A stretch of DNA of 64,000 nt, from positions 178,065 to 242,064 of the IMG/VR virus record IMGVR_UViG_3300032116_014939. The stretch is one strand, 5' to 3'. Shown here one piece after another: positions 1,460-63,806 of this stretch. The notes under the pieces were generated by a model. It made no database searches, was not told the origin of the DNA, and was given only the letters and a program-made list of their open reading frames with translations. A program made the translations under genes and the position numbers. Within the stretch, counting starts at the first letter, position 1. Each line of letters starts with the position of its first letter.

Positions 1460-2266
1460 ATGGAAAATATTTTAGATTTAAGTGTTATATTACCTATTAA
1501 AAGTATGGTAATGAGAGATTTTGAGGATTTCTTTAAAAAATCAATTGAGTCTGTACAATCTCAAGAGTTCTTACCAAAAAACTTAATTATAGTTCATGGT
1601 AAAGATAAAAATTTATCGGATTATTTGAAAAAATATGATTTTCAAAATCTTAAAGTAACAACTTTTGAATTTGATGGAGAACCAAATTTTTCAAATCAGG
1701 TTAATTTTGGAATTACAAAAGCTGAAACTAAATGGGTTAGTATTCTAGAAGTTGACGATGAATACTCAAAAATTTGGTTTAAAAATGTAAAAAAATATTT
1801 AGATTCATATTCTGATGTTGACGCATTTTTACCTATCGTAGTTGAGGTAGATAATAAATTAACCTTCCAAGGATTTACAAACGAAGCTACATTTGCGGCT
1901 AATTTCTCACAAGAAATGGGATATCTAACAAATGAAACTTTATTACAATATCAAAATTTTCAAACATCAGGAATGGTATTCAAAAAATCTCTAATTGAAG
2001 ATTTTGGTGGATTTAAACCAAGCATTAAATTAACATTTGTTTATGAATTGTTACTTCGTTTAACGTACAATTCGGCTAAAATTATGACTATTCCTAAAAT
2101 TGGTTACAAACACACTAATTTAAGAGAAGGTTCTATTTTTTGGGAATACAAAAATGGTGAAACCAAACTTGAAGAAAATGAGGTTAAGTTTTGGGTATCT
2201 TCAGCTAAAAAAGAATATTTTTTTAGTGAAGACAGAAACATAAAATTTGTTCCTGAAAATGCTTAA
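1460..2266 (+). CDS. glycosyltransferase family 2 (GT-A)
   Basis: 'LSVILPI' first strand, 'NFGITKAETKWVSILEVDD' DxD-like motif; ATG at 1460 preferred over TTG at 1445. Confidence 0.8.
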   Translation: MENILDLSVILPIKSMVMRDFEDFFKKSIESVQSQEFLPKNLIIVHGKDKNLSDYLKKYDFQNLKVTTFEFDGEPNFSNQVNFGITKAETKWVSILEVDDEYSKIWFKNVKKYLDSYSDVDAFLPIVVEVDNKLTFQGFTNEATFAANFSQEMGYLTNETLLQYQNFQTSGMVFKKSLIEDFGGFKPSIKLTFVYELLLRLTYNSAKIMTIPKIGYKHTNLREGSIFWEYKNGETKLEENEVKFWVSSAKKEYFFSEDRNIKFVPENA

Positions 2267-3003
2267 TGATATTAAGCGCCAGCTCAATAGAAATTGCCGT
2301 TAAGACGAAAAAAAAATCTAGCGGTGAAAATTACTTTGACATAAGAGAAGAGAATGCGGTCAGAATGTTTCTGACTGCTTCTACTTTTGAAGAAAAAAAT
2401 AAGATTTATAATGAATATTTAAGACATCCTTTAGATAAAATGATTTCTTCAATTATTCGTAGATATAAATTATACAGAAAAGATATGGATTTTATTGAAA
2501 TTCATACTGATACACATTCATTTTTGATGACAAAAATTGACAAATTTAGTCCATCAAAAGAAAAGAAAGCTTATTCATATTTTGGAACTATTTGCAAGAA
2601 TTATCTTATGGGTCAAATATTAAAAGACCAAAAAGAACAAAATAGAAAAATTTCCTATGAAGATATATCAGGTGATTTAGAAAATTCTCCTGAAATGGTT
2701 TATTACTTAGATGTTGAACCATCTGAAGAAGTTAATTTAATACCAATATTAATTGATTATATTAAAGAAACTATTGAAATTGATGATTTAAACGAAAGTG
2801 AAATAAAATTAGGTATTTCATTAGTTGAGATTATGGAAAATTATGAGACAATTTTTCCAGCAACTGATAACAATAAATTTAATAAAAATATTATTTTATT
2901 ATCGCTCAGAGAGATGACAAATATGTCAACAAAAGAAATAAGAGCGTCAATGAAAAAGTTCAAAAAAATATATACTGCTCTACTCCAAGTTAATCCTGAA
3001 TAA
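2266..3003 (+). CDS. phage sigma factor, T4 gp55-like (late transcription)
   Basis: Sigma region-2-like 'KIDKFSPSKEKKAYSYFGTICKNYL' (compare gp55-type FDPEKxxNxFAYFTxI) and a C-terminal helical segment. Confidence 0.72.
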   Translation: MILSASSIEIAVKTKKKSSGENYFDIREENAVRMFLTASTFEEKNKIYNEYLRHPLDKMISSIIRRYKLYRKDMDFIEIHTDTHSFLMTKIDKFSPSKEKKAYSYFGTICKNYLMGQILKDQKEQNRKISYEDISGDLENSPEMVYYLDVEPSEEVNLIPILIDYIKETIEIDDLNESEIKLGISLVEIMENYETIFPATDNNKFNKNIILLSLREMTNMSTKEIRASMKKFKKIYTALLQVNPE

Positions 3004-30500: not shown

Positions 30501-30895
30501 GGGGATGTTTTTGGATTTGACAGGTATGAATCTGTCATAAAACGCACGTCGGGGCTAAACTAACCCTGTAAAACTGGTTTAAAACACAAACGGCAACACA
30601 ATTGCAAAACTTTCTACACTCGGTTTAATCCGTACTGAAGAAGTAACTGTAGCCTAATCTAAGATTAGTATACAACGGGGTCGGTGAGCATATAACCTTG
30701 CAACAGAAGCTTGTACTGTGGTGTGGTTTCTATCCGAAAAGAAACAAAGTGGAGGATTAGTTCTCAGTAAACCGAACCACTATAAAATAAGGGAATTGTG
30801 AAGTTTCGGATTGTTTAGAAAAACAATGACCTAAACGTGTAGTGTTTTATGGTCGACATATTTGGACCGGGGTTCGAACCCCCGCATCTCCACCA
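30501..30895 (+). ncRNA. ssrA: tmRNA
   Basis: 5' GGGGATGTTTTTGGATTTGACAGG and 3' GGTTCGAACCCCCGCATCTCCACCA; acceptor stem GGGGAUG/CAUCUCC with the G3:U alanine determinant, T-loop and encoded CCA; 395 nt. Confidence 0.95.
30592..30657 (+). other. tmRNA tag reading frame (A)GNTIAKLSTLGLIRTEEVTVA*
   Basis: Resume-like context ACAAAC|GGC AAC, then 21 sense codons and TAA. Confidence 0.7.
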
Positions 30896-33288: not shown

Positions 33289-33365
33289 TGGTACCCCCGA
33301 AGGGATTCGAACCCCTGACCCACAGATTAGAAATCTGTTGCTCTATCCTACTGAGCTACGAAGGC
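33289..33365 (-). tRNA. tRNA-Arg(UCU)
   Basis: GCCTTCG-TA-GCTCAGTAGGATAGAGC-A-ACAGA-TTTCTAA-TCTGT-GGGTC-AGGGGTTCGAATCCCTT-CGGGGGT-ACCA; TATATTTG promoter at 33378-33385 (minus strand). Confidence 0.95.
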
Positions 33366-51205: not shown

Positions 51206-51274
51206 ATGGTAACAAAAAAAGTTAAAAGAAAACTACGAAATTTAAACAACAATAATATTTTTAAGAAATCCTGA
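51206..51274 (+). CDS. Asn-rich attenuator leader peptide (not in ORF track)
   Basis: MVTKKVKRKLRNLNNNNIFKKS*; AAT TTA AAC AAC AAT AAT at 51239-51256. Confidence 0.72.
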   Translation: MVTKKVKRKLRNLNNNNIFKKS

Positions 51275-51294
51275 CATTTGTCAGGATTTTTTTT
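51266..51294 (+). terminator. attenuator-type intrinsic terminator overlapping the leader stop codon
   Basis: AAATCCTGAC-attt-GTCAGGATTT followed by TTTTT, 35 nt upstream of the AsnRS-like ATG and on the same strand. Confidence 0.85.
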
Positions 51295-51329
51295 GCCCTT
51301 TTAATAAATAAAATAAAAAAAAACAAAAA

Positions 51330-52154
51330 ATGAAAAACACAGAAACTTACAACGAGTTAGTTCAAAAGATGAGAACATTCTTCCAAAACAAAGGTTTTAA
51401 AGAAGTTCCAACTCAATCAAGATTATCAATCTTGGCGGCGTGTGAAAATCCACACTCAATAACAACATTCAATTATCAAGGAGAAGTATGGCCACTACCA
51501 CAGACGGGTCAAATGTGGTTAGAATACGAACTTCTTAAGAATCCTGAATGGAACGGTGTCTATTGTATTTCAACGTCTTATAGACAAGAAAAAGACCCAA
51601 TTCCAGGTCGTCACGAAATGATTTTTCCAATGTTTGAATTCGAATCAAAAGGTGGAATGAAAGAAATGTTAAAACTTGAATCTGAACTTTTAGATTATTT
51701 AGGTTTTGATTCACCTGTAGAAGTTAACTACGATGATGTATGTGAAGAGTACGGTGGAGTTTCAATTTTAGAAAACGAACACGAAACAAGAATGTGGGAA
51801 GAAAAAGGTTCAGTCGTCTCACTTCAAAATTTCCCATACAGAACAAACCCATTTTGGAACATGAGAGAAAGTGAAAACAAAATATTCAACAAAGTTGATG
51901 TAATTCTTTACGGACAAGAAACAATTGGTTCCGCAGAAAGAAGTTCTAACGTAGAAGAAATGAAAAATAACTTCTACACAATAGAAAATGGAAAATATTC
52001 TGAAAAACTTTTTGAACTATTCGGAAAAGAAAGAGTTGAGAAGGAATTAGAAGAATTCTTATCTCATGATTTCTTCCCAAGATTTGGTGGTGGGATTGGG
52101 ATGACCCGTTTAGCAAGAGCTTACGAACTACTACAACAAGAAGTAACAGTATAA
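51330..52154 (+). CDS. class IIb aaRS catalytic-core paralog (AsnRS-like, probable asparagine synthetase)
   Basis: Motif 2 'STSYRQE...RHEMIFPMFEFE' and motif 3 'RFGGGIGMTRL'; 274 aa with no anticodon-binding OB domain. Confidence 0.8.
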   Translation: MKNTETYNELVQKMRTFFQNKGFKEVPTQSRLSILAACENPHSITTFNYQGEVWPLPQTGQMWLEYELLKNPEWNGVYCISTSYRQEKDPIPGRHEMIFPMFEFESKGGMKEMLKLESELLDYLGFDSPVEVNYDDVCEEYGGVSILENEHETRMWEEKGSVVSLQNFPYRTNPFWNMRESENKIFNKVDVILYGQETIGSAERSSNVEEMKNNFYTIENGKYSEKLFELFGKERVEKELEEFLSHDFFPRFGGGIGMTRLARAYELLQQEVTV

Positions 52155-57719: not shown

Positions 57720-57735
57720 ATTACAATAAATACCT
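57699..57735 (-). repeat. 37-bp promoter+leader repeat, copy 1
   Basis: CTCGGTGATAATATATTTCATATTACAATAAATACCT, identical at 60291-60327. Confidence 0.92.
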
Positions 57736-58271
57736 CAAAGTAAAAAACGGTGGAAGTTGGATACCCGTAAAGGAAATATATTATTTCCCTTTGTTCGATT
57801 ATCATCTTTCCATAAAGGTCTCAAGTTTTTATAATAACATGATTTTTTAACCCATTCTTCAGATTTATACAAAGATACTGGAATAATATGGTCATATTCC
57901 CATTCACCACGATTACCCCAAGTCATACCTTCTAAAAATCTTGATTCAATATAAGGTATAAACAATTCAACGGAAATACCAAGATATTCGGACAAAAAAC
58001 TATTTTTTTTATAACCTCTTTTACTGTTAATACTTCTAACTAAAGACCTTAAACTCTGAGTTGTACCATGAATAGGATTTTCTTTTTCTCGTCTACGTTT
58101 TCTCTTAACATCATACGCATTCAACTCCTTATGATATTCAGGGTCATTCTTTCTACGTTCCATCTTTTGAATATACCTACGTTTGTTATCACATAGTTTA
58201 CACTTCTTTCGGTTATCTCTAAAATCGGAAACGGGCTTACTAATATTACAACAATTACAAATACGTTCCAT
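57735..58271 (-). CDS. HNH homing endonuclease-like protein
   Basis: N-terminal CxxC pair; 'GMTWGNRGEWEYDHIIPVS...NLRPLWKDDNRTKGN'. Confidence 0.85.
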   Translation of the reverse strand: MERICNCCNISKPVSDFRDNRKKCKLCDNKRRYIQKMERRKNDPEYHKELNAYDVKRKRRREKENPIHGTTQSLRSLVRSINSKRGYKKNSFLSEYLGISVELFIPYIESRFLEGMTWGNRGEWEYDHIIPVSLYKSEEWVKKSCYYKNLRPLWKDDNRTKGNNIFPLRVSNFHRFLL

Positions 58272-58276
58272 ATTTT

Positions 58277-59116
58277 TTATACTCCTCTCATTTCTTTTAA
58301 AAATTTATTATATCTATCAATATTTGATTCGTTAATTTTATTTGATTTACTAGCATTTTCATCTTTCCACAAAGGTTGCAGATTAGTGTGATGATTTAAA
58401 TATATTTTTTCTTCAAATGTATTTCCACAACTAATGGGAACAATATGGTCAAAACACCATTCACTACGATTGTCCCATGACATACCCTCCTTGAATAAAC
58501 TTTCAAAATACTTTAATCCGCTACTATAATCAATTCCAAGAATTTCTTCAGGAGAAAATTTACTTCTATATTCAGGGAATCCTGATAAAGAATATGAAAG
58601 TATTGAACCAATACTTTGTTTATATTTAAACAGTGGCGCTTTATCGTAATCCAATTTATCACTTTTACACCTGTTAGCAATAGTAAAAAGAGGTCGGATA
58701 TTAGTATAATGAGAGTTTTTTTCATAACTCTCTTGATTTTCAGATTTACTTAAAGGAAATATATGGTCAACTTCCCAATCACCATAATTATCCCACGACA
58801 TACCATCAACAAATTGTTTCTCCAAATGTTCTTTTAACATAATGGCATCACATCCAATAATATCTTCGTAAGTTTTTCCTTCAGGTTTAGAATAACCACG
58901 TCTTTTAAATTCATTTTTTAGTCGAGATTTTAATGACAATAAAATTTTATAATGTATTTCAAGTGACTTTCGGTTCTTTCTAATCTCAACCCTAGATTTT
59001 TTAGCACATTCTTTACATTTAGAAGACACTTTATTTTTAGCAAAATAATATTCTGACCTAGGTTTGCTTTCCTTACATACATAACAAACTTTTAATTCAT
59101 CCAATCTATGACCCAT
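58277..59116 (-). CDS. HNH homing endonuclease-like protein with two HNH domains
   Basis: 'GMSWDNYGDWEVDHIFPLS...NIRPLFTIANRCKSD' and 'GMSWDNRSEWCFDHIVPIS...NLQPLWKDENASKSN'. Confidence 0.85.
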   Translation of the reverse strand: MGHRLDELKVCYVCKESKPRSEYYFAKNKVSSKCKECAKKSRVEIRKNRKSLEIHYKILLSLKSRLKNEFKRRGYSKPEGKTYEDIIGCDAIMLKEHLEKQFVDGMSWDNYGDWEVDHIFPLSKSENQESYEKNSHYTNIRPLFTIANRCKSDKLDYDKAPLFKYKQSIGSILSYSLSGFPEYRSKFSPEEILGIDYSSGLKYFESLFKEGMSWDNRSEWCFDHIVPISCGNTFEEKIYLNHHTNLQPLWKDENASKSNKINESNIDRYNKFLKEMRGV

Positions 59117-59168
59117 AAACCAAATATAACGAAAAATGGGGTATTGGAAATGTGAGAAATAAAAAAAA

Positions 59169-59552
59169 TTATATTTCTTTTATAAATTGACCAACACCTA
59201 CACTACGAAAACCTTTACTTCTTAATTTGTTTTTAACTCTAACCGCATCTTCTCTTTCAAAACCAGCATCGGCAAAATCTAAAGGTGCCCCCACATCAAC
59301 TATAACGTATCTACTAGTAATACCAAATTTAACACAATCAGTATCAATATATTGTCTTAAATAATTACGGATTTCGTCATAAAAATTATTAGATATGGTT
59401 TTATTATTAGAATCAACGTCATCATTAGGTGTTGGGTTATTTTTGGGGACAATACGTTTGGCTGGACGTTTTTTTTCAGCTTCTGATAATTTAACAACCC
59501 TTTTAATCAATCTTGTTAAATCAGATTCAGTTAATCTTACAATTTTTTTCAT
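59169..59552 (-). CDS. leader-bearing protein (paralog of 59558-59929)
   Basis: MKKIVRLTESDL leader; shared 'DVGAPLDF.D.GF...K.KLR..GF.S.GVGQ' domain. Confidence 0.8.
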   Translation of the reverse strand: MKKIVRLTESDLTRLIKRVVKLSEAEKKRPAKRIVPKNNPTPNDDVDSNNKTISNNFYDEIRNYLRQYIDTDCVKFGITSRYVIVDVGAPLDFADAGFEREDAVRVKNKLRSKGFRSVGVGQFIKEI

Positions 59553-59557
59553 ATTAA

Positions 59558-59929
59558 TTAAAATTCGCTTGTTCTAACTTTTTTCGCATATTGACCTACA
59601 CCCCAACTATTAAAACCATGTTTTCTTAATTTATCTTTAGCTTTGTTTGCCTCACTTCTTGAAAATCCACAATCTTCAAAATCTAATGGAGCCCCAACAT
59701 CAAATACCAAATAATCTGCTAAATACTTATATGTAATACAACCCGCTTTAAGATACGGTTCCATAGCGTTAAACACCGGTTGTGTTTCAATATCTTTATC
59801 TGATGGTTTAGAATTAAATCCACTATAAAATGTGTCTTTTATCTTATCTTCCCAACTATCATTTTCTTTGATGACTTTCTTAACTATTTTAACCAAATCA
59901 GACTCGGTTAATCTTATAACTTTTTTCAT
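59558..59929 (-). CDS. leader-bearing protein (paralog of 59169-59552)
   Basis: MKKVIRLTESDLVKIVKKVIKEN leader; same C-terminal domain. Confidence 0.8.
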   Translation of the reverse strand: MKKVIRLTESDLVKIVKKVIKENDSWEDKIKDTFYSGFNSKPSDKDIETQPVFNAMEPYLKAGCITYKYLADYLVFDVGAPLDFEDCGFSRSEANKAKDKLRKHGFNSWGVGQYAKKVRTSEF

Positions 59930-59960
59930 AATAATATTTTATTATAAATACCACAAAATT

Positions 59961-59997
59961 AAAAAGGGGGTAGGGGGATTGGAACAACGGGAAAAAA
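59961..59997. repeat. G-rich intergenic repeat, copy 1
   Basis: AAAAAGGGGGTAGGGGGATTGGAACAACGGGAAAAAA. Confidence 0.9.
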
Positions 59998-59999
59998 TT

Positions 60000-60311
60000 T
60001 TATACAAAAATAACATCCCACACCGCAGTAGAATCTCCGTTTTTGTCTTTAGGAAATAATAATGTAAACATGGTTCCAATCTTTTCTTCAATATCTGAAC
60101 CCTCGTCATAAGCATGATAACTACGACCACCTGTATTTAGTATAATTTGATATACAGGATATGTCTCATTTCTAAATTTCCAATTTTTTGTTTTTATCTC
60201 AACATCACCATTAAACCATTCGTATTCAGATAATAAGTTCTCAACATAATCCTTTAAGAAATTAACTTTCCTCATTTGTAAATTCTGAGACTCGGTGATA
60301 ATATATTTCAT
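60000..60311 (-). CDS. MKYIITES-leader protein
   Basis: 103-aa ORF. Confidence 0.75.
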   Translation of the reverse strand: MKYIITESQNLQMRKVNFLKDYVENLLSEYEWFNGDVEIKTKNWKFRNETYPVYQIILNTGGRSYHAYDEGSDIEEKIGTMFTLLFPKDKNGDSTAVWDVIFV

Positions 60312-60327
60312 ATTACAATAAATACCT
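60291..60327 (-). repeat. 37-bp promoter+leader repeat, copy 2
   Basis: Identical to 57699-57735. Confidence 0.92.
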
Positions 60328-60383
60328 TAAAAATAAAAAACCCCTCACATCGGAGGGGTTGTATAATTTAATATTGTTTTACA

Positions 60384-60764
60384 TCACCAACGTTTGGGAT
60401 TAAACCATCCAAGATGTCTGCCGGTTTCCTTAAAGCTTTGACGATTATCATCATCTTCCTCATCTTCTTTACCAAGAAGAACATAATTCAAATCGTCAAG
60501 AACTGTATACTTATCAACCTCCTCATCATTAACATTCAAAAAAATATCACGTCCAAGATATTTCACCAACGGGGTACCTCCTTCAACATACTCATTGTAT
60601 AACTCAATAATACTCTGTGGTGAAGATGTTTCACCAACTTTATTTCTAACACCCTTAAATCCAGCAGATATGAAAATATCCTTTTCTTCATGTCTATTTT
60701 CCTTAACAACTCTTTTAACTATTTTAACCAAATCTGATTCAGTTAATGTTATAACTTTTTTCAT
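60384..60764 (-). CDS. leader-bearing protein
   Basis: MKKVITLTESDLVKIVKRVVKEN leader. Confidence 0.78.
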   Translation of the reverse strand: MKKVITLTESDLVKIVKRVVKENRHEEKDIFISAGFKGVRNKVGETSSPQSIIELYNEYVEGGTPLVKYLGRDIFLNVNDEEVDKYTVLDDLNYVLLGKEDEEDDDNRQSFKETGRHLGWFNPKRW

Positions 60765-60796
60765 ATTAATATTTTATAATAAATACACCCCAAAAC

Positions 60797-60837
60797 AAAA
60801 AAGGGGGTAGGGGGGAATTGGGACAACGGAAAAAAAA
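60797..60837. repeat. G-rich intergenic repeat, copy 2
   Basis: AAAAAAGGGGGTAGGGGGGAATTGGGACAACGGAAAAAAAA. Confidence 0.9.
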
Positions 60838-61140
60838 TTATTTTTTCTTGTCTGTACGTTTAACTTCAACGTTATTAATAAAAACCTTTGTCGGGGGATT
60901 ATTTCTTGTCGATTCAAAATATTCATCAAAGGCGGTCCAGAACATATTTGGTTCTAAATTATATGTATTTAACATTTCGTTACCATGTATTGACAATCGA
61001 CTAACATCTTCAGAGTTGTAATATCTTTTTATTCTTTCTTTAAGAGCATCCATCTTCTGTTTCGGATATGTTTGCTCCGCAATAACTCGTTTAATTATAC
61101 GAGTCAAATCTGATTCTGTAAGTCTAATTATCTTTTTCAT
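60838..61140 (-). CDS. leader-bearing protein
   Basis: MKKIIRLTESDLTRIIKRVIAEQ leader. Confidence 0.78.
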   Translation of the reverse strand: MKKIIRLTESDLTRIIKRVIAEQTYPKQKMDALKERIKRYYNSEDVSRLSIHGNEMLNTYNLEPNMFWTAFDEYFESTRNNPPTKVFINNVEVKRTDKKK

Positions 61141-61175
61141 ATGTAATAAATATAACAGAAATAAAAAAGGGGAAA

Positions 61176-61751
61176 TTAAGGTTTAACCAAATAGATTTTA
61201 TTTTCATCGTAATTCTTAACCAAGACAGTCTCTTGTTTAAATTCTTGAGCAAGTTCTTCAGCAACCTTATTTAATACGTCAGAAGTAATTCCAACGATTT
61301 CAACAGATAATGAACTCTCATCATACAACGAACCATCTTTGGCTTTATATCGACCCTTAACAAAATTTCCAATGGTCACACCAAATATTTCAGGGTTGTT
61401 TTTAATCACCTTATTTATTTTACTTGATTTAAACAAAATATTTGTTGCGGTTTCAAGTTTGTTTTTAATAAAACGAACCAACTTGTTTTTAGATAATTCA
61501 ACAGCATTAACATTAACAGAAAAAACAATTACCCCACCTTTATCTTCAAACTCAAAATCAATTTCTTCAGTAAGTTCAGATTCAACATTTGGTTGTATAT
61601 AAAATGTTTGAGCATCAGGGTCGTTGTCTATATTAATAGAAAACCCATTTAATTTTAATCCTTCCATTAAACTACTCGCACCAATCTGCTCGTAAGTCTT
61701 TTTTGACGAATCAAAGTTCTTAACTTTATCAATAAATTTTCTAATATCCAT
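61176..61751 (-). CDS. putative SAM lyase (T3 SAMase-like fold)
   Basis: 'KGRYK...DESSLSVEIV...VAEELAQEFKQETVLV' parallels T3 SAMase 'TGCYRE...EEKTVRV...VARLACNEWEQDCVLV' (alignment from memory). Confidence 0.5.
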   Translation of the reverse strand: MDIRKFIDKVKNFDSSKKTYEQIGASSLMEGLKLNGFSINIDNDPDAQTFYIQPNVESELTEEIDFEFEDKGGVIVFSVNVNAVELSKNKLVRFIKNKLETATNILFKSSKINKVIKNNPEIFGVTIGNFVKGRYKAKDGSLYDESSLSVEIVGITSDVLNKVAEELAQEFKQETVLVKNYDENKIYLVKP

Positions 61752-61792
61752 ATACTTGATTTTTAAATAAATATAAACTAAAGATACAAAAT

Positions 61793-61833
61793 AAAAAAGG
61801 GGGGTAGGGGGGATTGGAACAACGGAAAAAAAA
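61793..61833. repeat. G-rich intergenic repeat, copy 3
   Basis: AAAAAAGGGGGGTAGGGGGGATTGGAACAACGGAAAAAAAA. Confidence 0.9.
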
Positions 61834-61838
61834 TATTT

Positions 61839-62300
61839 TTATAATTTACCAACAAGTTCATCCAATCCCTCAATGATAATCCCACACTCAGAATAAAACT
61901 CGTAGTTACACTTACCCGTGTTCTTAGCTCTAAGAGTAACCAATGAATGTTCCTTGTCAGTCAAAGAAATGGTGGACGCATATTTCTTACATAATAAAAC
62001 AAAATCATCAACACCAATAGTAGGATTCTTACTTAACTCATCCATGATATATCCCATGGCAATCTTTCTCGGAACATAGTGGTCATGAACAATCTTACCA
62101 CCACCCTTAACTCCATTAGATGATAAACCCGTATGCCAAAACTTAGTGTTAGTTAAATCAAACAAAGGGTTGCGGTTCCTAGATAAAAACATATCATATA
62201 ATACATCATTATCCTTAACTTCCAAATACCTCGGAACAAGACAAAGAAAATCCTTCAATGTCTCCTCAACCTTAACCAATTGTTTATTTGTAAGTTTCAT
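61839..62300 (-). CDS. hypothetical protein
   Basis: 153 aa; 'VHDHYVPRK' may be a degenerate HNH-like motif; TATATTTG upstream. Confidence 0.7.
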   Translation of the reverse strand: MKLTNKQLVKVEETLKDFLCLVPRYLEVKDNDVLYDMFLSRNRNPLFDLTNTKFWHTGLSSNGVKGGGKIVHDHYVPRKIAMGYIMDELSKNPTIGVDDFVLLCKKYASTISLTDKEHSLVTLRAKNTGKCNYEFYSECGIIIEGLDELVGKL

Positions 62301-62321
62301 AATACAAATATAAGAAAAAAA

Positions 62322-62825: not shown

Positions 62826-62874
62826 ATATATTTTTTTTACAAAGATAAAACAATAATACTAATTTACCAAAAAA

Positions 62875-63206: not shown

Positions 63207-63449
63207 TTAATAATCTTCAGTACCCATAAATGCTTCGTCCCCAATATCACCTATAGTATCAATAATATCAGTTAAAACTCTTACGACACCTTCCGTTCCG
63301 TATGTTTTATAAACAGGTTGTAAAATATCCATAATTTGGACATGTACTGACTCAGTATCATCATGAAATGAATCTTCATCTCTTTCTTCATTAATAACCC
63401 TTTTAATTATATTGGTTAATTCTTTTTCTGTTAATCTAATCTTTTTCAT
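63207..63449 (-). CDS. leader-bearing small acidic protein
   Basis: MKKIRLTEKELTNIIKRVINEE leader; ATG at 63449. Confidence 0.78.
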   Translation of the reverse strand: MKKIRLTEKELTNIIKRVINEERDEDSFHDDTESVHVQIMDILQPVYKTYGTEGVVRVLTDIIDTIGDIGDEAFMGTEDY

Positions 63450-63476: not shown

Positions 63477-63806
63477 TTTTCCAAAAAATTTCCCAAAATT
63501 TATTTTTTACATATAGGGAACATTTTAAAACAAAGGGTCGCTTTTCTAAAAAATTTTTCCAGGATTTTTTCGAGGGGATTATCCCCCCTTCTGACCCAAA
63601 AAACCCCCTATATAAGGGGGGATACGGGAGGGGGTACCCCATAGGTAGGGGTATAGGAGGGGGTAGTAGGGGGTGTTGATAACTTTTAATAAGTATCCCC
63701 TCCCCTTTACATTAGGTCACATCCTTTTACCACTGCTACTATGGTAACCATTAGTAGGCAGTATAGGATGATTGCTTGATTGGGTGTGATGGTAAATCGT
63801 TTCATA
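63477..63806. other. non-coding region of G/C runs and palindromes
   Basis: About 330 bp without a credible gene; CCCCCTATATAAGGGGG, GGGGTACCCC and many G4-G6 tracts on the + strand. Confidence 0.75.

What the first reader, a model, noticed from the sequence alone, without database searches (positions are those of the whole stretch)
59961..61833. Non-palindromic G-rich repeat marking gene boundaries
Seen: three copies of A5-6 G5-6 TA G5-6 A(A)TT GG(A/G)ACAAC GG(G) A6-8 at 59961, 60797 and 61793, each directly after a minus-strand stop codon and just before the next gene's upstream motif; a truncated AAAAAAGGGG occurs near 61163. They cannot form a hairpin, unlike the many normal terminators here, and are striking in such AT-rich DNA. 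Inference: a protein-binding or recombination site, a G-quadruplex element (four G tracts), or a factor-dependent terminator (C-rich on the transcript).
Basis: partly seen in the sequence, partly recalled or inferred. Interest (0 to 1): 0.62.

Follow-up and report, generated by a model that had tools for sequence, protein, structure and literature searches.

The report
Hairpin-less C-rich gene-boundary box in phage
A 40-base pyrimidine-rich box, conserved in many uncultured freshwater giant phages, sits between small accessory genes exactly where these phages otherwise place a hairpin terminator, so it is probably an unusual transcription-boundary and gene-shuffling signal.

Summary
Three copies lie at 59961-59999, 60797-60837 and 61793-61833, where chance predicts 0.02. 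They are the only full copies in the 242-kb phage record; two decayed copies lie at 59125-59178 and 61163-61176.

Genes run on the minus strand. On the transcript the unit reads: stop, T7-9, CCGTTGTTCCAAT, C5-6, TA, C5-6, T5-9, then 15-20 nt to the genome-wide motif TATTTAT, then ATG.

It is not a recent duplication remnant. At least 170 distinct copies occur in related AT-rich freshwater phage contigs, always in one hypervariable locus and always co-oriented with the genes. Only the core AATC5-6(T/A)AC5T5-9 is constant.

The box occupies the slot used elsewhere by canonical hairpin terminators, with the same spacer length. A census found 28 box junctions, 18 hairpin junctions and none with both. 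It nearly always follows a gene end, and in some relatives it lies between convergent gene ends with no promoter after it. Insertions and gene replacements between relatives end at it. Its RNA is unstructured.

Best reading: a variant of T4-type promoter/stem-loop cassettes (PeSLs) whose stem-loop is replaced by a C-rich box acting as a factor-dependent transcription boundary and recombination patch. The biochemical mechanism is unproven; no RNA data exist.

The parts
59961..59999 (-). C-box copy 1. On the - strand: T6 CCCGTTGTTCCAAT C5 TA C5 T5. It lies between the stop of ORF 60000-60311 and the promoter-like motif of ORF 59558-59929.
60797..60837 (-). C-box copy 2 (T8 CCGTTGTCCCAATT C6 TA C5 T6), between the stop of ORF 60838-61140 and ORF 60384-60764.
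61793..61833 (-). C-box copy 3 (T8 CCGTTGTTCCAAT C6 TA C6 T6), between the stop of ORF 61839-62300 and ORF 61176-61751. That downstream ORF is not a paralogue of the genes after copies 1 and 2.
61163..61176 (-). Truncated copy (TTTCCCC T6) in the same slot, before ORF 60838-61140.
59125..59178 (-). Decayed copy (T8 ... TTCCAAT ACCCCA T5) before TATATTTG and the endonuclease VII-like gene 58277-59116.
   Evidence: family D2
59944..59950 (-). TATTTAT motif after copy 1. The matching motifs are at 60779-60785 after copy 2 and 61767-61773 after copy 3. It is a genome-wide -10-only promoter-like motif, present before 70 of 266 ORFs including the large terminase and the prohead protease.
60341..60358 (-). 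Canonical hairpin terminator (CCCCTC-CGATGT-GAGGGG followed by T6) in the equivalent slot of the neighbouring junction. It serves as an internal comparison.
62305..62321 (-). Junction without a box: T7CT then TATATTTG (a Bacteroidota-type -7 box), then 4 nt, then ATG of ORF 61839-62300. In relative L010 a full C-box lies between the T-run and this same -7 box.
59558..59929 (-). Cassette gene with the shared 22-aa N-terminal leader MKKvvRLTESDLiriVKRVIkE. The same leader is found on ORFs 59169-59552, 60384-60764, 60838-61140 and 63207-63449.
61176..61751 (-). Cassette gene without the leader. It has a weak, sub-threshold match to the S-AdoMet lyase family.
63480..63800 (-). Conserved non-coding stretch at the head of the locus, with G5/C5 hairpins and a box-like CCCCCTACTACCCCCT.

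Best explanation
The repeat is the upstream half of a conserved intergenic regulatory cassette: box, T-run, promoter-like motif, ATG. It separates small accessory-gene cassettes in one hypervariable locus of a lineage of T4-related jumbo phages that probably infect freshwater Bacteroidota.

The box stands where these genomes otherwise put a G+C hairpin terminator. The most likely working model has four steps:
1. The ribosome leaves at the stop codon embedded in the A-run/T-run.
2. RNA polymerase makes a G-poor, C-rich stretch of about 40 nt that cannot fold.
3. A factor that recognises C-rich single-stranded RNA (host Rho, or a sequence-specific host or phage protein) acts while polymerase pauses on the following U5-9 tract and ends or insulates the upstream transcript.
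4. The TATTTAT or TAnnTTTG element 8-20 nt further on starts the next transcript.

Because the same roughly 55 nt recur at many cassette borders, they also serve as homology patches at which cassettes are gained, lost and swapped.

Shown: conservation, position, orientation, equivalence to the hairpin slot, lack of structure, and coincidence with insertion, deletion and replacement borders. Inferred: termination itself and the factor involved.
For: - **Conservation.** 29 non-redundant full copies occur in 10 related loci, with conservation dropping to background outside about 55 nt. At least 170 distinct copies carry the core in viral and metagenome contigs.
- **One locus per genome.** The copies are always co-oriented with the genes and lie downstream of the same anchor genes.
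- **Slot equivalence.** In 135 junctions of 10 loci there are 28 boxes, 18 hairpin terminators and 0 with both. Spacers are the same length (about 55-85 nt). Distances from the C-run or the stem to the next motif also match: 15-20 versus 16-17 nt to TATTTAT, and 8-9 versus 10 nt to TAnnTTTG.
- **Asymmetric context.** A co-oriented ORF ends within 45 nt upstream in 103 of the 140 copies for which both flanks could be scored. What follows varies: usually promoter plus ATG, but convergent gene ends in L149 and L153/L157 (L175 and L276 show the same pattern by sequence inspection only, without an ORF call), and no gene in L014 and L150.
- **Not a general promoter part.** TATTTAT promoters elsewhere have no upstream element. 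The orthologous gene 61839-62300 has a complete TTTG-N20-TATATTTG promoter without a box here and with an inserted box in L010.
- **RNA properties.** The RNA is unstructured, and the junction after 61839 has the highest C-minus-G count in the first 50 nt among those listed after the 266 stops.
- **Borders of rearrangements.** Homology between the window and L021 stops at the end of the box. L006 carries an extra cassette flanked by 40-nt repeats made of the box half plus promoter. L004 lacks a box-plus-gene unit that L006 has. One upstream gene is joined to up to 6 different downstream sequences at the box. Contigs from four lake runs break and join at these modules.
- **Precedent.** PeSL cassettes of T4-type phages (PMC4122927).
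Against: - There are no RNA data, so no transcript end has been seen.
- A bacterial polymerase is not known to stop at a U-tract without a hairpin.
- The C-rich tract is only about 40 nt. In a 78-nt C-over-G measure only the junction after 61839 reaches the top ten (rank 6); the other two do not. A classical Rho loading site is therefore not demonstrated.
- The near-invariant core, including CAAT and the T/A-A linker, is more than Rho would need and points to a sequence-specific partner that was not identified.
- Restriction to one locus per genome is odd for a general terminator type.
- The zero overlap between boxes and hairpins is only mildly significant: about 3.7 co-occurrences would be expected by chance.
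- Conservation could partly reflect gene conversion between copies rather than function.
Confidence: 0.45

Rival explanations
1. The box is a double-stranded DNA operator or upstream promoter element. A phage or host protein, for example the phage's own sigma-70-type factor or an activator or repressor, binds it to time the downstream promoter of the cassette genes.
For: - The core of about 20 bp is almost invariant while both flanks vary, as expected for a specific binding site.
- 80 of 97 typical copies are followed by TATTTAT at 15-20 nt.
- The phage encodes a full-length sigma factor with a region-4-like helix-turn-helix.
Against: - The distance to the promoter motif is loose (15-20 nt) and differs between TATTTAT and TAnnTTTG (8-12 nt).
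- Copies lie between convergent gene ends or before gene-free DNA, with no promoter.
- 70 TATTTAT promoters work without any upstream element.
- The same gene has a promoter with or without the box.
- C-run and T-run lengths vary by 1-4 nt, which would shift a rigid site.
Confidence: 0.2
2. The box is mainly a DNA-level recombination or mobility site, either the target of an endonuclease or nickase, or simply a homology patch kept uniform by gene conversion. It has no role in transcription.
For: - Cassette insertions, deletions and replacements end at the box.
- The locus is hypervariable in lake populations.
- Endonuclease VII/HNH-like genes lie in the same locus, directly beside boxes in L010 and L019.
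- Copy number is low and all copies are on one strand.
Against: - Breakpoints are also found in the promoter and in the shared N-terminal coding part, so homology in general, not the box alone, is used.
- Endonuclease genes are absent from the locus as sampled in L004, L006, L016 and L017.
- Strict placement right after stop codons, and the retained T-run, are not needed for a recombination site.
- The control anchor 230 nt downstream also shows many combinations: 17 of 108 upstream groups have more than one partner, against 28 of 89 at the box.
Confidence: 0.15
3. The box acts at the RNA level but not in termination. It could be a processing site, a 3'-end stabiliser, or a pyrimidine-rich enhancer for ribosome loading on read-through transcripts in a host without Shine-Dalgarno use.
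For: - Orientation with the genes is strict.
- The RNA is unstructured and pyrimidine-rich, 25-40 nt before the ATG.
- Bacteroidota translation does not use Shine-Dalgarno pairing (PMC6847099 abstract, listed).
Against: - Copies before convergent genes or gene-free DNA have no start codon to serve.
- If TATTTAT is the promoter, the box is not in the downstream gene's own transcript.
Confidence: 0.1
4. The G-rich template strand folds into a G-quadruplex, or the C-strand into an i-motif. This blocks polymerases or stalls replication forks, and that structure is the functional principle.
For: - The copies are among the highest G4Hunter windows in a 32% G+C genome (1.9-2.3).
- Run length varies (5-6) while the runs themselves are kept, and the linker may be TA, AA or ATA.
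Against: - Only two long runs are conserved.
- Two runs allow only a weak two-layer or an intermolecular structure.
- The flanking CAAT and the T-run are conserved as well, which a quadruplex does not explain.
Confidence: 0.07

Closest known systems
PeSL / PmSL cassettes (promoter-early or promoter-middle stem-loops) of T4-type phages (Arbiol et al. 2010, PMC2839356; Comeau et al. 2014, PMC4122927)
   Same: - A short composite element lies between small non-essential ORFs of hyperplastic regions.
- A terminator module sits directly upstream of a promoter and the start codon.
- Many near-identical copies exist.
- Copies, including half copies, are found at insertions, deletions and swaps between close relatives.
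- The host phage belongs to the T4 superfamily (head module, gp21-type protease).
   Different: - The terminator module is not a stem-loop but a non-palindromic C-rich box.
- The promoter is not sigma-70 -35/-10 but a -10-only TATTTAT or the Bacteroidota TAnnTTTG.
- Only 1-5 copies occur per genome, all in one locus.
- The core is conserved across phage lineages whose 5' halves differ.
- Mini-circles were not tested.
Rho-dependent terminators (rut site plus pause)
   Same: C-rich, G-poor, unstructured, untranslated RNA immediately after a stop codon, followed by a U-rich pause-prone tract.
   Different: It is much shorter than classical rut regions, it is a fixed sequence instead of a loose composition, and Rho dependence was not tested.
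Intrinsic (hairpin plus U-tract) terminators of the same genome
   Same: Same slot, same A-run before and T-run after, same distance to the next promoter motif, and mutually exclusive use.
   Different: There is no stem, because the G-rich 3' arm is missing.
T4 internal-protein (IP) locus with shared capsid-targeting sequences (Repoila 1994 as cited in PMC4122927; PMC9026906)
   Same: A hypervariable locus of small genes that share a short N-terminal leader ending in L/I-X-E, with conserved regulatory sequences between them.
   Different: The leader is 22 aa with a different sequence. Packaging and cleavage are not shown. The intergenic element is different.

Membership tests
PeSL cassettes of T4-type phages | Stem-loop (terminator) immediately upstream of the promoter | tested here: not met
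   The box RNA does not fold (z -0.45, -0.95, +1.2). Sibling junctions in the same locus do carry such stem-loops.
PeSL cassettes of T4-type phages | Sigma-70-like early promoter with -35 and -10 boxes | tested here: not met
   The box is followed by TATTTAT, a -10-only motif with no upstream element, or by TAnnTTTG.
PeSL cassettes of T4-type phages | Clustered in hyperplastic regions between small ORFs, at insertions, deletions and swaps between relatives | tested here: met
PeSL cassettes of T4-type phages | Recombination between copies gives mini-circles | not testable with these tools
   Only contigs were available, and no raw long reads.
Intrinsic terminator | G+C-rich hairpin directly followed by a U-tract | tested here: not met
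   A U-tract (T5-9) is present in all 29 copies found without requiring it. No hairpin forms.
Rho-dependent terminator | C-rich, G-poor, unstructured RNA of about 60-80 nt free of ribosomes | tested here: inconclusive
   The tract is C-rich, unstructured and right after the stop, but only about 40 nt long. Only the junction after 61839 is in the top ten of a 78-nt C-minus-G ranking, at rank 6 of 266.
Rho-dependent terminator | Termination depends on Rho | not testable with these tools
   No RNA runs hold the locus.
Intramolecular G-quadruplex | Four G tracts, kept in relatives | tested here: not met
   G4Hunter scores are 1.9-2.3 in the window, but the two short tracts lie in the 5' half that is replaced in lineages B-E.
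T4 middle promoter (Mot box) | Activator box at a fixed 11-13 bp from the -10 box, at dozens of promoters | tested here: not met
   Only 3 copies per genome, spacing of 8-20 nt, and copies without a promoter.
Integron attC / REP-type palindromic elements | Imperfect inverted repeats | tested here: not met
   No inverted partner. Bacterial look-alikes do have a G5 partner (103 of 119), but match the phage element only over the 20-mer that the search required (17.7 bits or less).
Rfam RNA families | Match to a curated covariance model | tested here: not met
   No match at the gathering score or at E <= 1.

The most novel reading that the evidence does not exclude
The constant core AAUC5-6(U/A)AC5U5-9 is a sequence-specific termination or insulation signal that works without a hairpin. 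It would be read by a dedicated host or phage protein, or completed in trans by a G-rich RNA that supplies the missing stem arm. It would be shared by several lineages of freshwater Bacteroidota phages and would double as the crossover point of an accessory-gene cassette system for injected head proteins.
Probability: 0.2. Interest if true: 0.75.

Novelty: new variant of a known kind. Interest (0 to 1): 0.5.

Why it matters
If the box ends transcripts, it would be a compact, hairpin-free and probably factor-dependent terminator for Bacteroidota, a phylum whose transcription signals differ from the textbook ones and for which few genetic parts exist. It also marks the borders of a fast-evolving cassette locus that probably encodes injected anti-defence proteins in abundant, uncultured lake phages. 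The 20-nt core is therefore a practical handle for finding such loci and their cassettes in metagenomes. Finally, it extends the idea of mobile regulatory cassettes from coliphage and vibriophage T4 relatives to a distant branch with different promoters.

Tried and rejected
- **Similar DNA in cultured phages:** none. The closest large terminase is Flavobacterium phage immuto at 28% identity.
- **Rfam:** nothing apart from a tmRNA and a tRNA.
- **RNA sequencing runs:** none hold the locus. The single read-laying run returned contigs only, so no transcript ends or nick sites could be seen.
- **Bacterial genomes:** the 20-mer finds more than 120 places in many phyla. These are hairpin elements of the form AAATCCCCC-TAA-CCCCC-loop-GGGGG and match the phage profile only over the required letters. 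They are rejected as homologues but kept as an oddity.
- **Box as the -35 box of the phage sigma factor, or as a Mot-like box:** rejected because of loose spacing, promoter-less copies and low copy number.
- **Box as coding sequence or a frameshift signal:** rejected because T-run and C-run lengths vary and frames differ.
- **Antisense promoter on the G strand:** no conserved -10 box, and the relevant half is variable.
- **Rut-like ranking over 78 nt:** not distinctive.
- **Pfam and PHROG scans of the cassette proteins:** no informative match apart from the endonuclease VII-like genes and a sub-threshold S-AdoMet lyase match. One Pfam call failed on a wrong coordinate and was not repeated.
- **Upstream/downstream partner analysis:** gave only a modest excess over an imperfect control.
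- **Not used:** structure prediction, complex prediction and the large protein searches, because no candidate binding protein emerged.
Full report
**1. The observation**

The window is the last 64 kb of a 242,064-bp IMG/VR virus record with 32% G+C, estimated 82% complete.

GGGGGTAGGGGG occurs three times on the + strand, at 59966, 60803 and 61800. Shuffles predict 0.02 matches. Each occurrence is followed by ATTGGRACAACGG. A profile built from all copies finds no fourth full copy anywhere in the record. Two decayed copies exist at 61163-61176 and 59125-59178.

All genes here are on the minus strand. In the sense of the transcripts the unit reads: stop codon, often embedded in A5-6 TAA; T7-9; CCGTTGTTCCAAT; C5-6; TA; C5-6; T5-6; (A/G)TTTT; a few bases; TATTTAT; 4-20 nt; ATG.

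**2. The genome**

The major head protein, portal, large terminase and a T4 gp21-type prohead protease identify a tailed jumbo phage of the T4 superfamily. Its closest cultured terminase is that of Flavobacterium phage immuto, at 28% identity.

Two promoter-like classes exist.

- TATTTAT(A)nnnA precedes 70 of 266 ORFs, a 16-fold enrichment. These include the terminase and the protease. The motif has no upstream partner, so it behaves as a -10-only motif like a T4 late promoter.
- TTTG-N19-21-TAnnTTTG is the sigma-A pattern of Bacteroidota (PMC9723704). It precedes a smaller set of mostly small genes: 8 full matches against 1 in the antisense control. It often lies 4 nt before the ATG, which implies leaderless mRNAs.

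The host is therefore probably a freshwater member of the Bacteroidota. DNA of the locus is present in runs from about 15 lake and freshwater studies, but in no RNA run.

**3. Conservation**

A pattern scan of IMG/VR found 16 related AT-rich contigs with 1-3 exact copies each. The profile then showed up to 5 copies per contig within 3-5 kb.

Across 29 non-redundant copies, conservation is high over about 55 nt (A-run, T-run, box, T-run, TTTT) and drops to background on both sides.

Scans with the core alone found 35 viral and more than 120 metagenome stretches, giving 176 distinct copies. In these the 5' half differs by lineage:

| Lineage | 5' half | Copies |
|---|---|---|
| A | CCGTTGTTC-like | 77 |
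| B | CCC-TTCG-GGG | 23 |
| C | GTGTGGCTGGC | 8 |
| D | CGG-AAA-CCG | 7 |

Only AATC5-6(T/A)AC5T5-9 is constant. The copies are thus not leftovers of one recent duplication.

**4. Position**

In every relative the copies lie in one locus, in gene orientation. They lie downstream of the same anchor genes: a lipoprotein gene, a conserved 300-nt non-coding stretch, and the MEMEEE and MEPEEE genes, which are driven by TAnnTTTG motifs.

A census of 135 junctions in ten loci gave 28 with a box, 18 with a canonical hairpin terminator, 0 with both and 89 with neither. Box and hairpin junctions have the same length of about 55-85 nt.

Hairpins here read AAA-CCCCNN-loop-NNGGGG-T6-ATTTT-N5-TATTTAT. The stem lies 16-17 nt from TATTTAT and 10 nt from TAnnTTTG. 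The box lies 15-20 nt and 8-9 nt away, respectively. The box therefore occupies the terminator slot.

Of the 140 copies for which both flanks could be scored, 103 have a co-oriented ORF ending within 45 nt upstream, typically 15-30 nt before the core. Downstream, most have a promoter motif and an ATG. In L149 and L153/L157 the next gene is convergent and ends at the T-run; L175 and L276 look the same by inspection of the sequence, but no ORF was called there. In L014 and L150 no gene follows.

Gene 61839-62300 has a complete host-type promoter and no box in this window. In L010 a box lies between the T-run and the same -7 box. These facts argue against a promoter element and for a function tied to the end of the upstream gene.

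**5. Structure**

The RNA of the three junctions is no more stable than shuffled sequence (z -0.45, -0.95, +1.2), whereas the hairpin junction folds. No Rfam family matches.

The G strand scores 1.9-2.3 in G4Hunter, among the highest in the genome. However, only the two long runs are conserved across lineages, so the four-tract quadruplex idea loses support.

The RNA is C-rich and G-poor for about 40 nt. In a 78-nt measure only one of the three junctions reaches the top ten (rank 6), so a classical Rho site is possible but not shown.

**6. Shuffling**

- Homology between the window and L021 runs through gene 61839-62300 and stops at the end of the box, after which different genes follow.
- L006 has an extra cassette flanked by 40-nt direct repeats made of the 3' half of the box plus the promoter.
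- L004 lacks a box-plus-gene unit that is present in L006.
- L010 has an endonuclease VII-like gene plus a box inserted where the window has neither.
- One upstream gene is joined to as many as six different downstream sequences at the box. The excess over an imperfect control is modest: 28 of 89 against 17 of 108.
- Contigs from four lake runs break and rejoin at these modules. These are metagenome contigs laid at 88% likeness and must be read with care.

Breakpoints also fall in the promoter and in the shared N-terminal coding part, so it is the whole conserved module, not the box alone, that offers homology.

**7. Interpretation**

The closest known system is the PeSL cassette of T4-type phages. 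A PeSL is a stem-loop terminator directly upstream of an early promoter, repeated in hyperplastic regions, and it mediates modular shuffling (PMC4122927; PMC2839356).

The present genome has the same layout with its own promoters and ordinary hairpins. The finding is a sub-family in which the stem-loop is replaced by a non-palindromic C-rich box.

I take the box to be a transcription boundary that needs a factor. That factor would be Rho or a sequence-specific binder of C-rich single strands. The box would double as a recombination patch. My confidence in this is 0.45.

The rivals are a duplex-DNA operator (0.2), a pure recombination or endonuclease site (0.15), another RNA-level role (0.1) and a quadruplex-based mechanism (0.07).

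The strict core sequence and the restriction to one locus are not explained by Rho alone. They keep open a more novel reading: a dedicated hairpin-less terminator system.

**8. Side observations**

The cassette genes include 33 proteins with an invariant 22-residue leader, MKKvvRLTESDLiriVKRVIkE, followed by unrelated sequence. The leader contains two L/I-X-E motifs, which is the cleavage motif of the T4 prohead protease (PMC9026906). The phage has such a protease, and these genes carry the late-type TATTTAT motif. The locus therefore resembles the T4 internal-protein locus.

Other items are listed separately: a phage tmRNA, the conserved non-coding stretch at 63480-63800, bacterial look-alike hairpin elements, and contig ends clustering at this locus.

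Noticed in passing
window 59169-61140 and 63207-63449; loci L004-L021: 33 small proteins share an invariant 22-aa N-terminus, MKKvvRLTESDLiriVKRVIkE, followed at once by unrelated sequence (65-235 aa). The leader has two L/I-X-E motifs, the T4 gp21 cleavage motif. It looks like a capsid-targeting leader, so the locus may encode injected internal proteins. A second family starts MKYiITEsQ (25 members).
   Followed up: partly
window 63480-63800: A roughly 300-nt non-coding stretch is conserved in L004, L006, L010 and L021. It has G5/C5 hairpins, a box-like CCCCCTACTACCCCCT and a strong terminator (C6-TTATATA-G5-T6). Its fold gives z -2.0 and it has no Rfam match. A spurious ORF (MGYPLPYPP...) is called across it. 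It could be a small RNA or a control region at the head of the locus.
   Followed up: partly
window 30501-30895 and 33289-33365: The phage carries a tmRNA gene (133 bits, tag AKLSTLGLIRTEEVTVA) and a tRNA-Arg(TCT).
   Followed up: no
whole record, e.g. window 62305-62312 and 62826-62850: Host-type TAnnTTTG boxes often lie exactly 4 nt before the ATG, which by the Bacteroidota -12 to -5 rule puts the transcript start on the A of the ATG (leaderless mRNA). TATTTAT shows two preferred distances to the ATG: 4-7 nt and 12-18 nt.
   Followed up: partly
loci L023-L142 (bacterial genomes): Bacteria and archaea of many phyla carry AAATCCCCC-TAA-CCCCC-TTTTcAAA-GGGGG(A) elements, sometimes several per genome and in both orientations. 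103 of 119 have the G5 partner that the phage box lacks. Their nature is unknown to me; they may be REP-like or terminator plus ribosome-site modules.
   Followed up: partly
contig ends of G000, L148, L150, L158, L160, L205, L225: About half of the contigs of 200 kb or more that carry the element end within about 4 kb of the cluster, and one 133-kb contig has copies at both ends. The likely cause is assembly breaks in a hypervariable, repeat-bearing locus, but a real genome end is not excluded.
   Followed up: no
window 57735-58271 and 58277-59116: Two adjacent endonuclease VII/HNH-like paralogues (phrog_1035) lie inside the cassette locus. The longer one has a second HNH/GmrSD_C-like part. 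Relatives carry such genes at other positions in the locus, in L010 and L019 directly beside a box.
   Followed up: partly
G000 51244-52044 (outside the window) and window 2266-3003: The phage encodes a full-length sigma-70-family factor (phrog_351, 177 bits), and a second ORF has a weak region-2 match. Their promoters were not identified.
   Followed up: no
window 61176-61751: The gene after copy 3 has a weak, sub-threshold match to the S-adenosylmethionine lyase family (E 0.0018). If real, that would be an anti-restriction function.
   Followed up: no
locus L255: One metagenome match (21% G+C) is a run of CCCCAA-type repeats, apparently a ciliate telomere. It is a chance match of the core pattern.
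   Followed up: no
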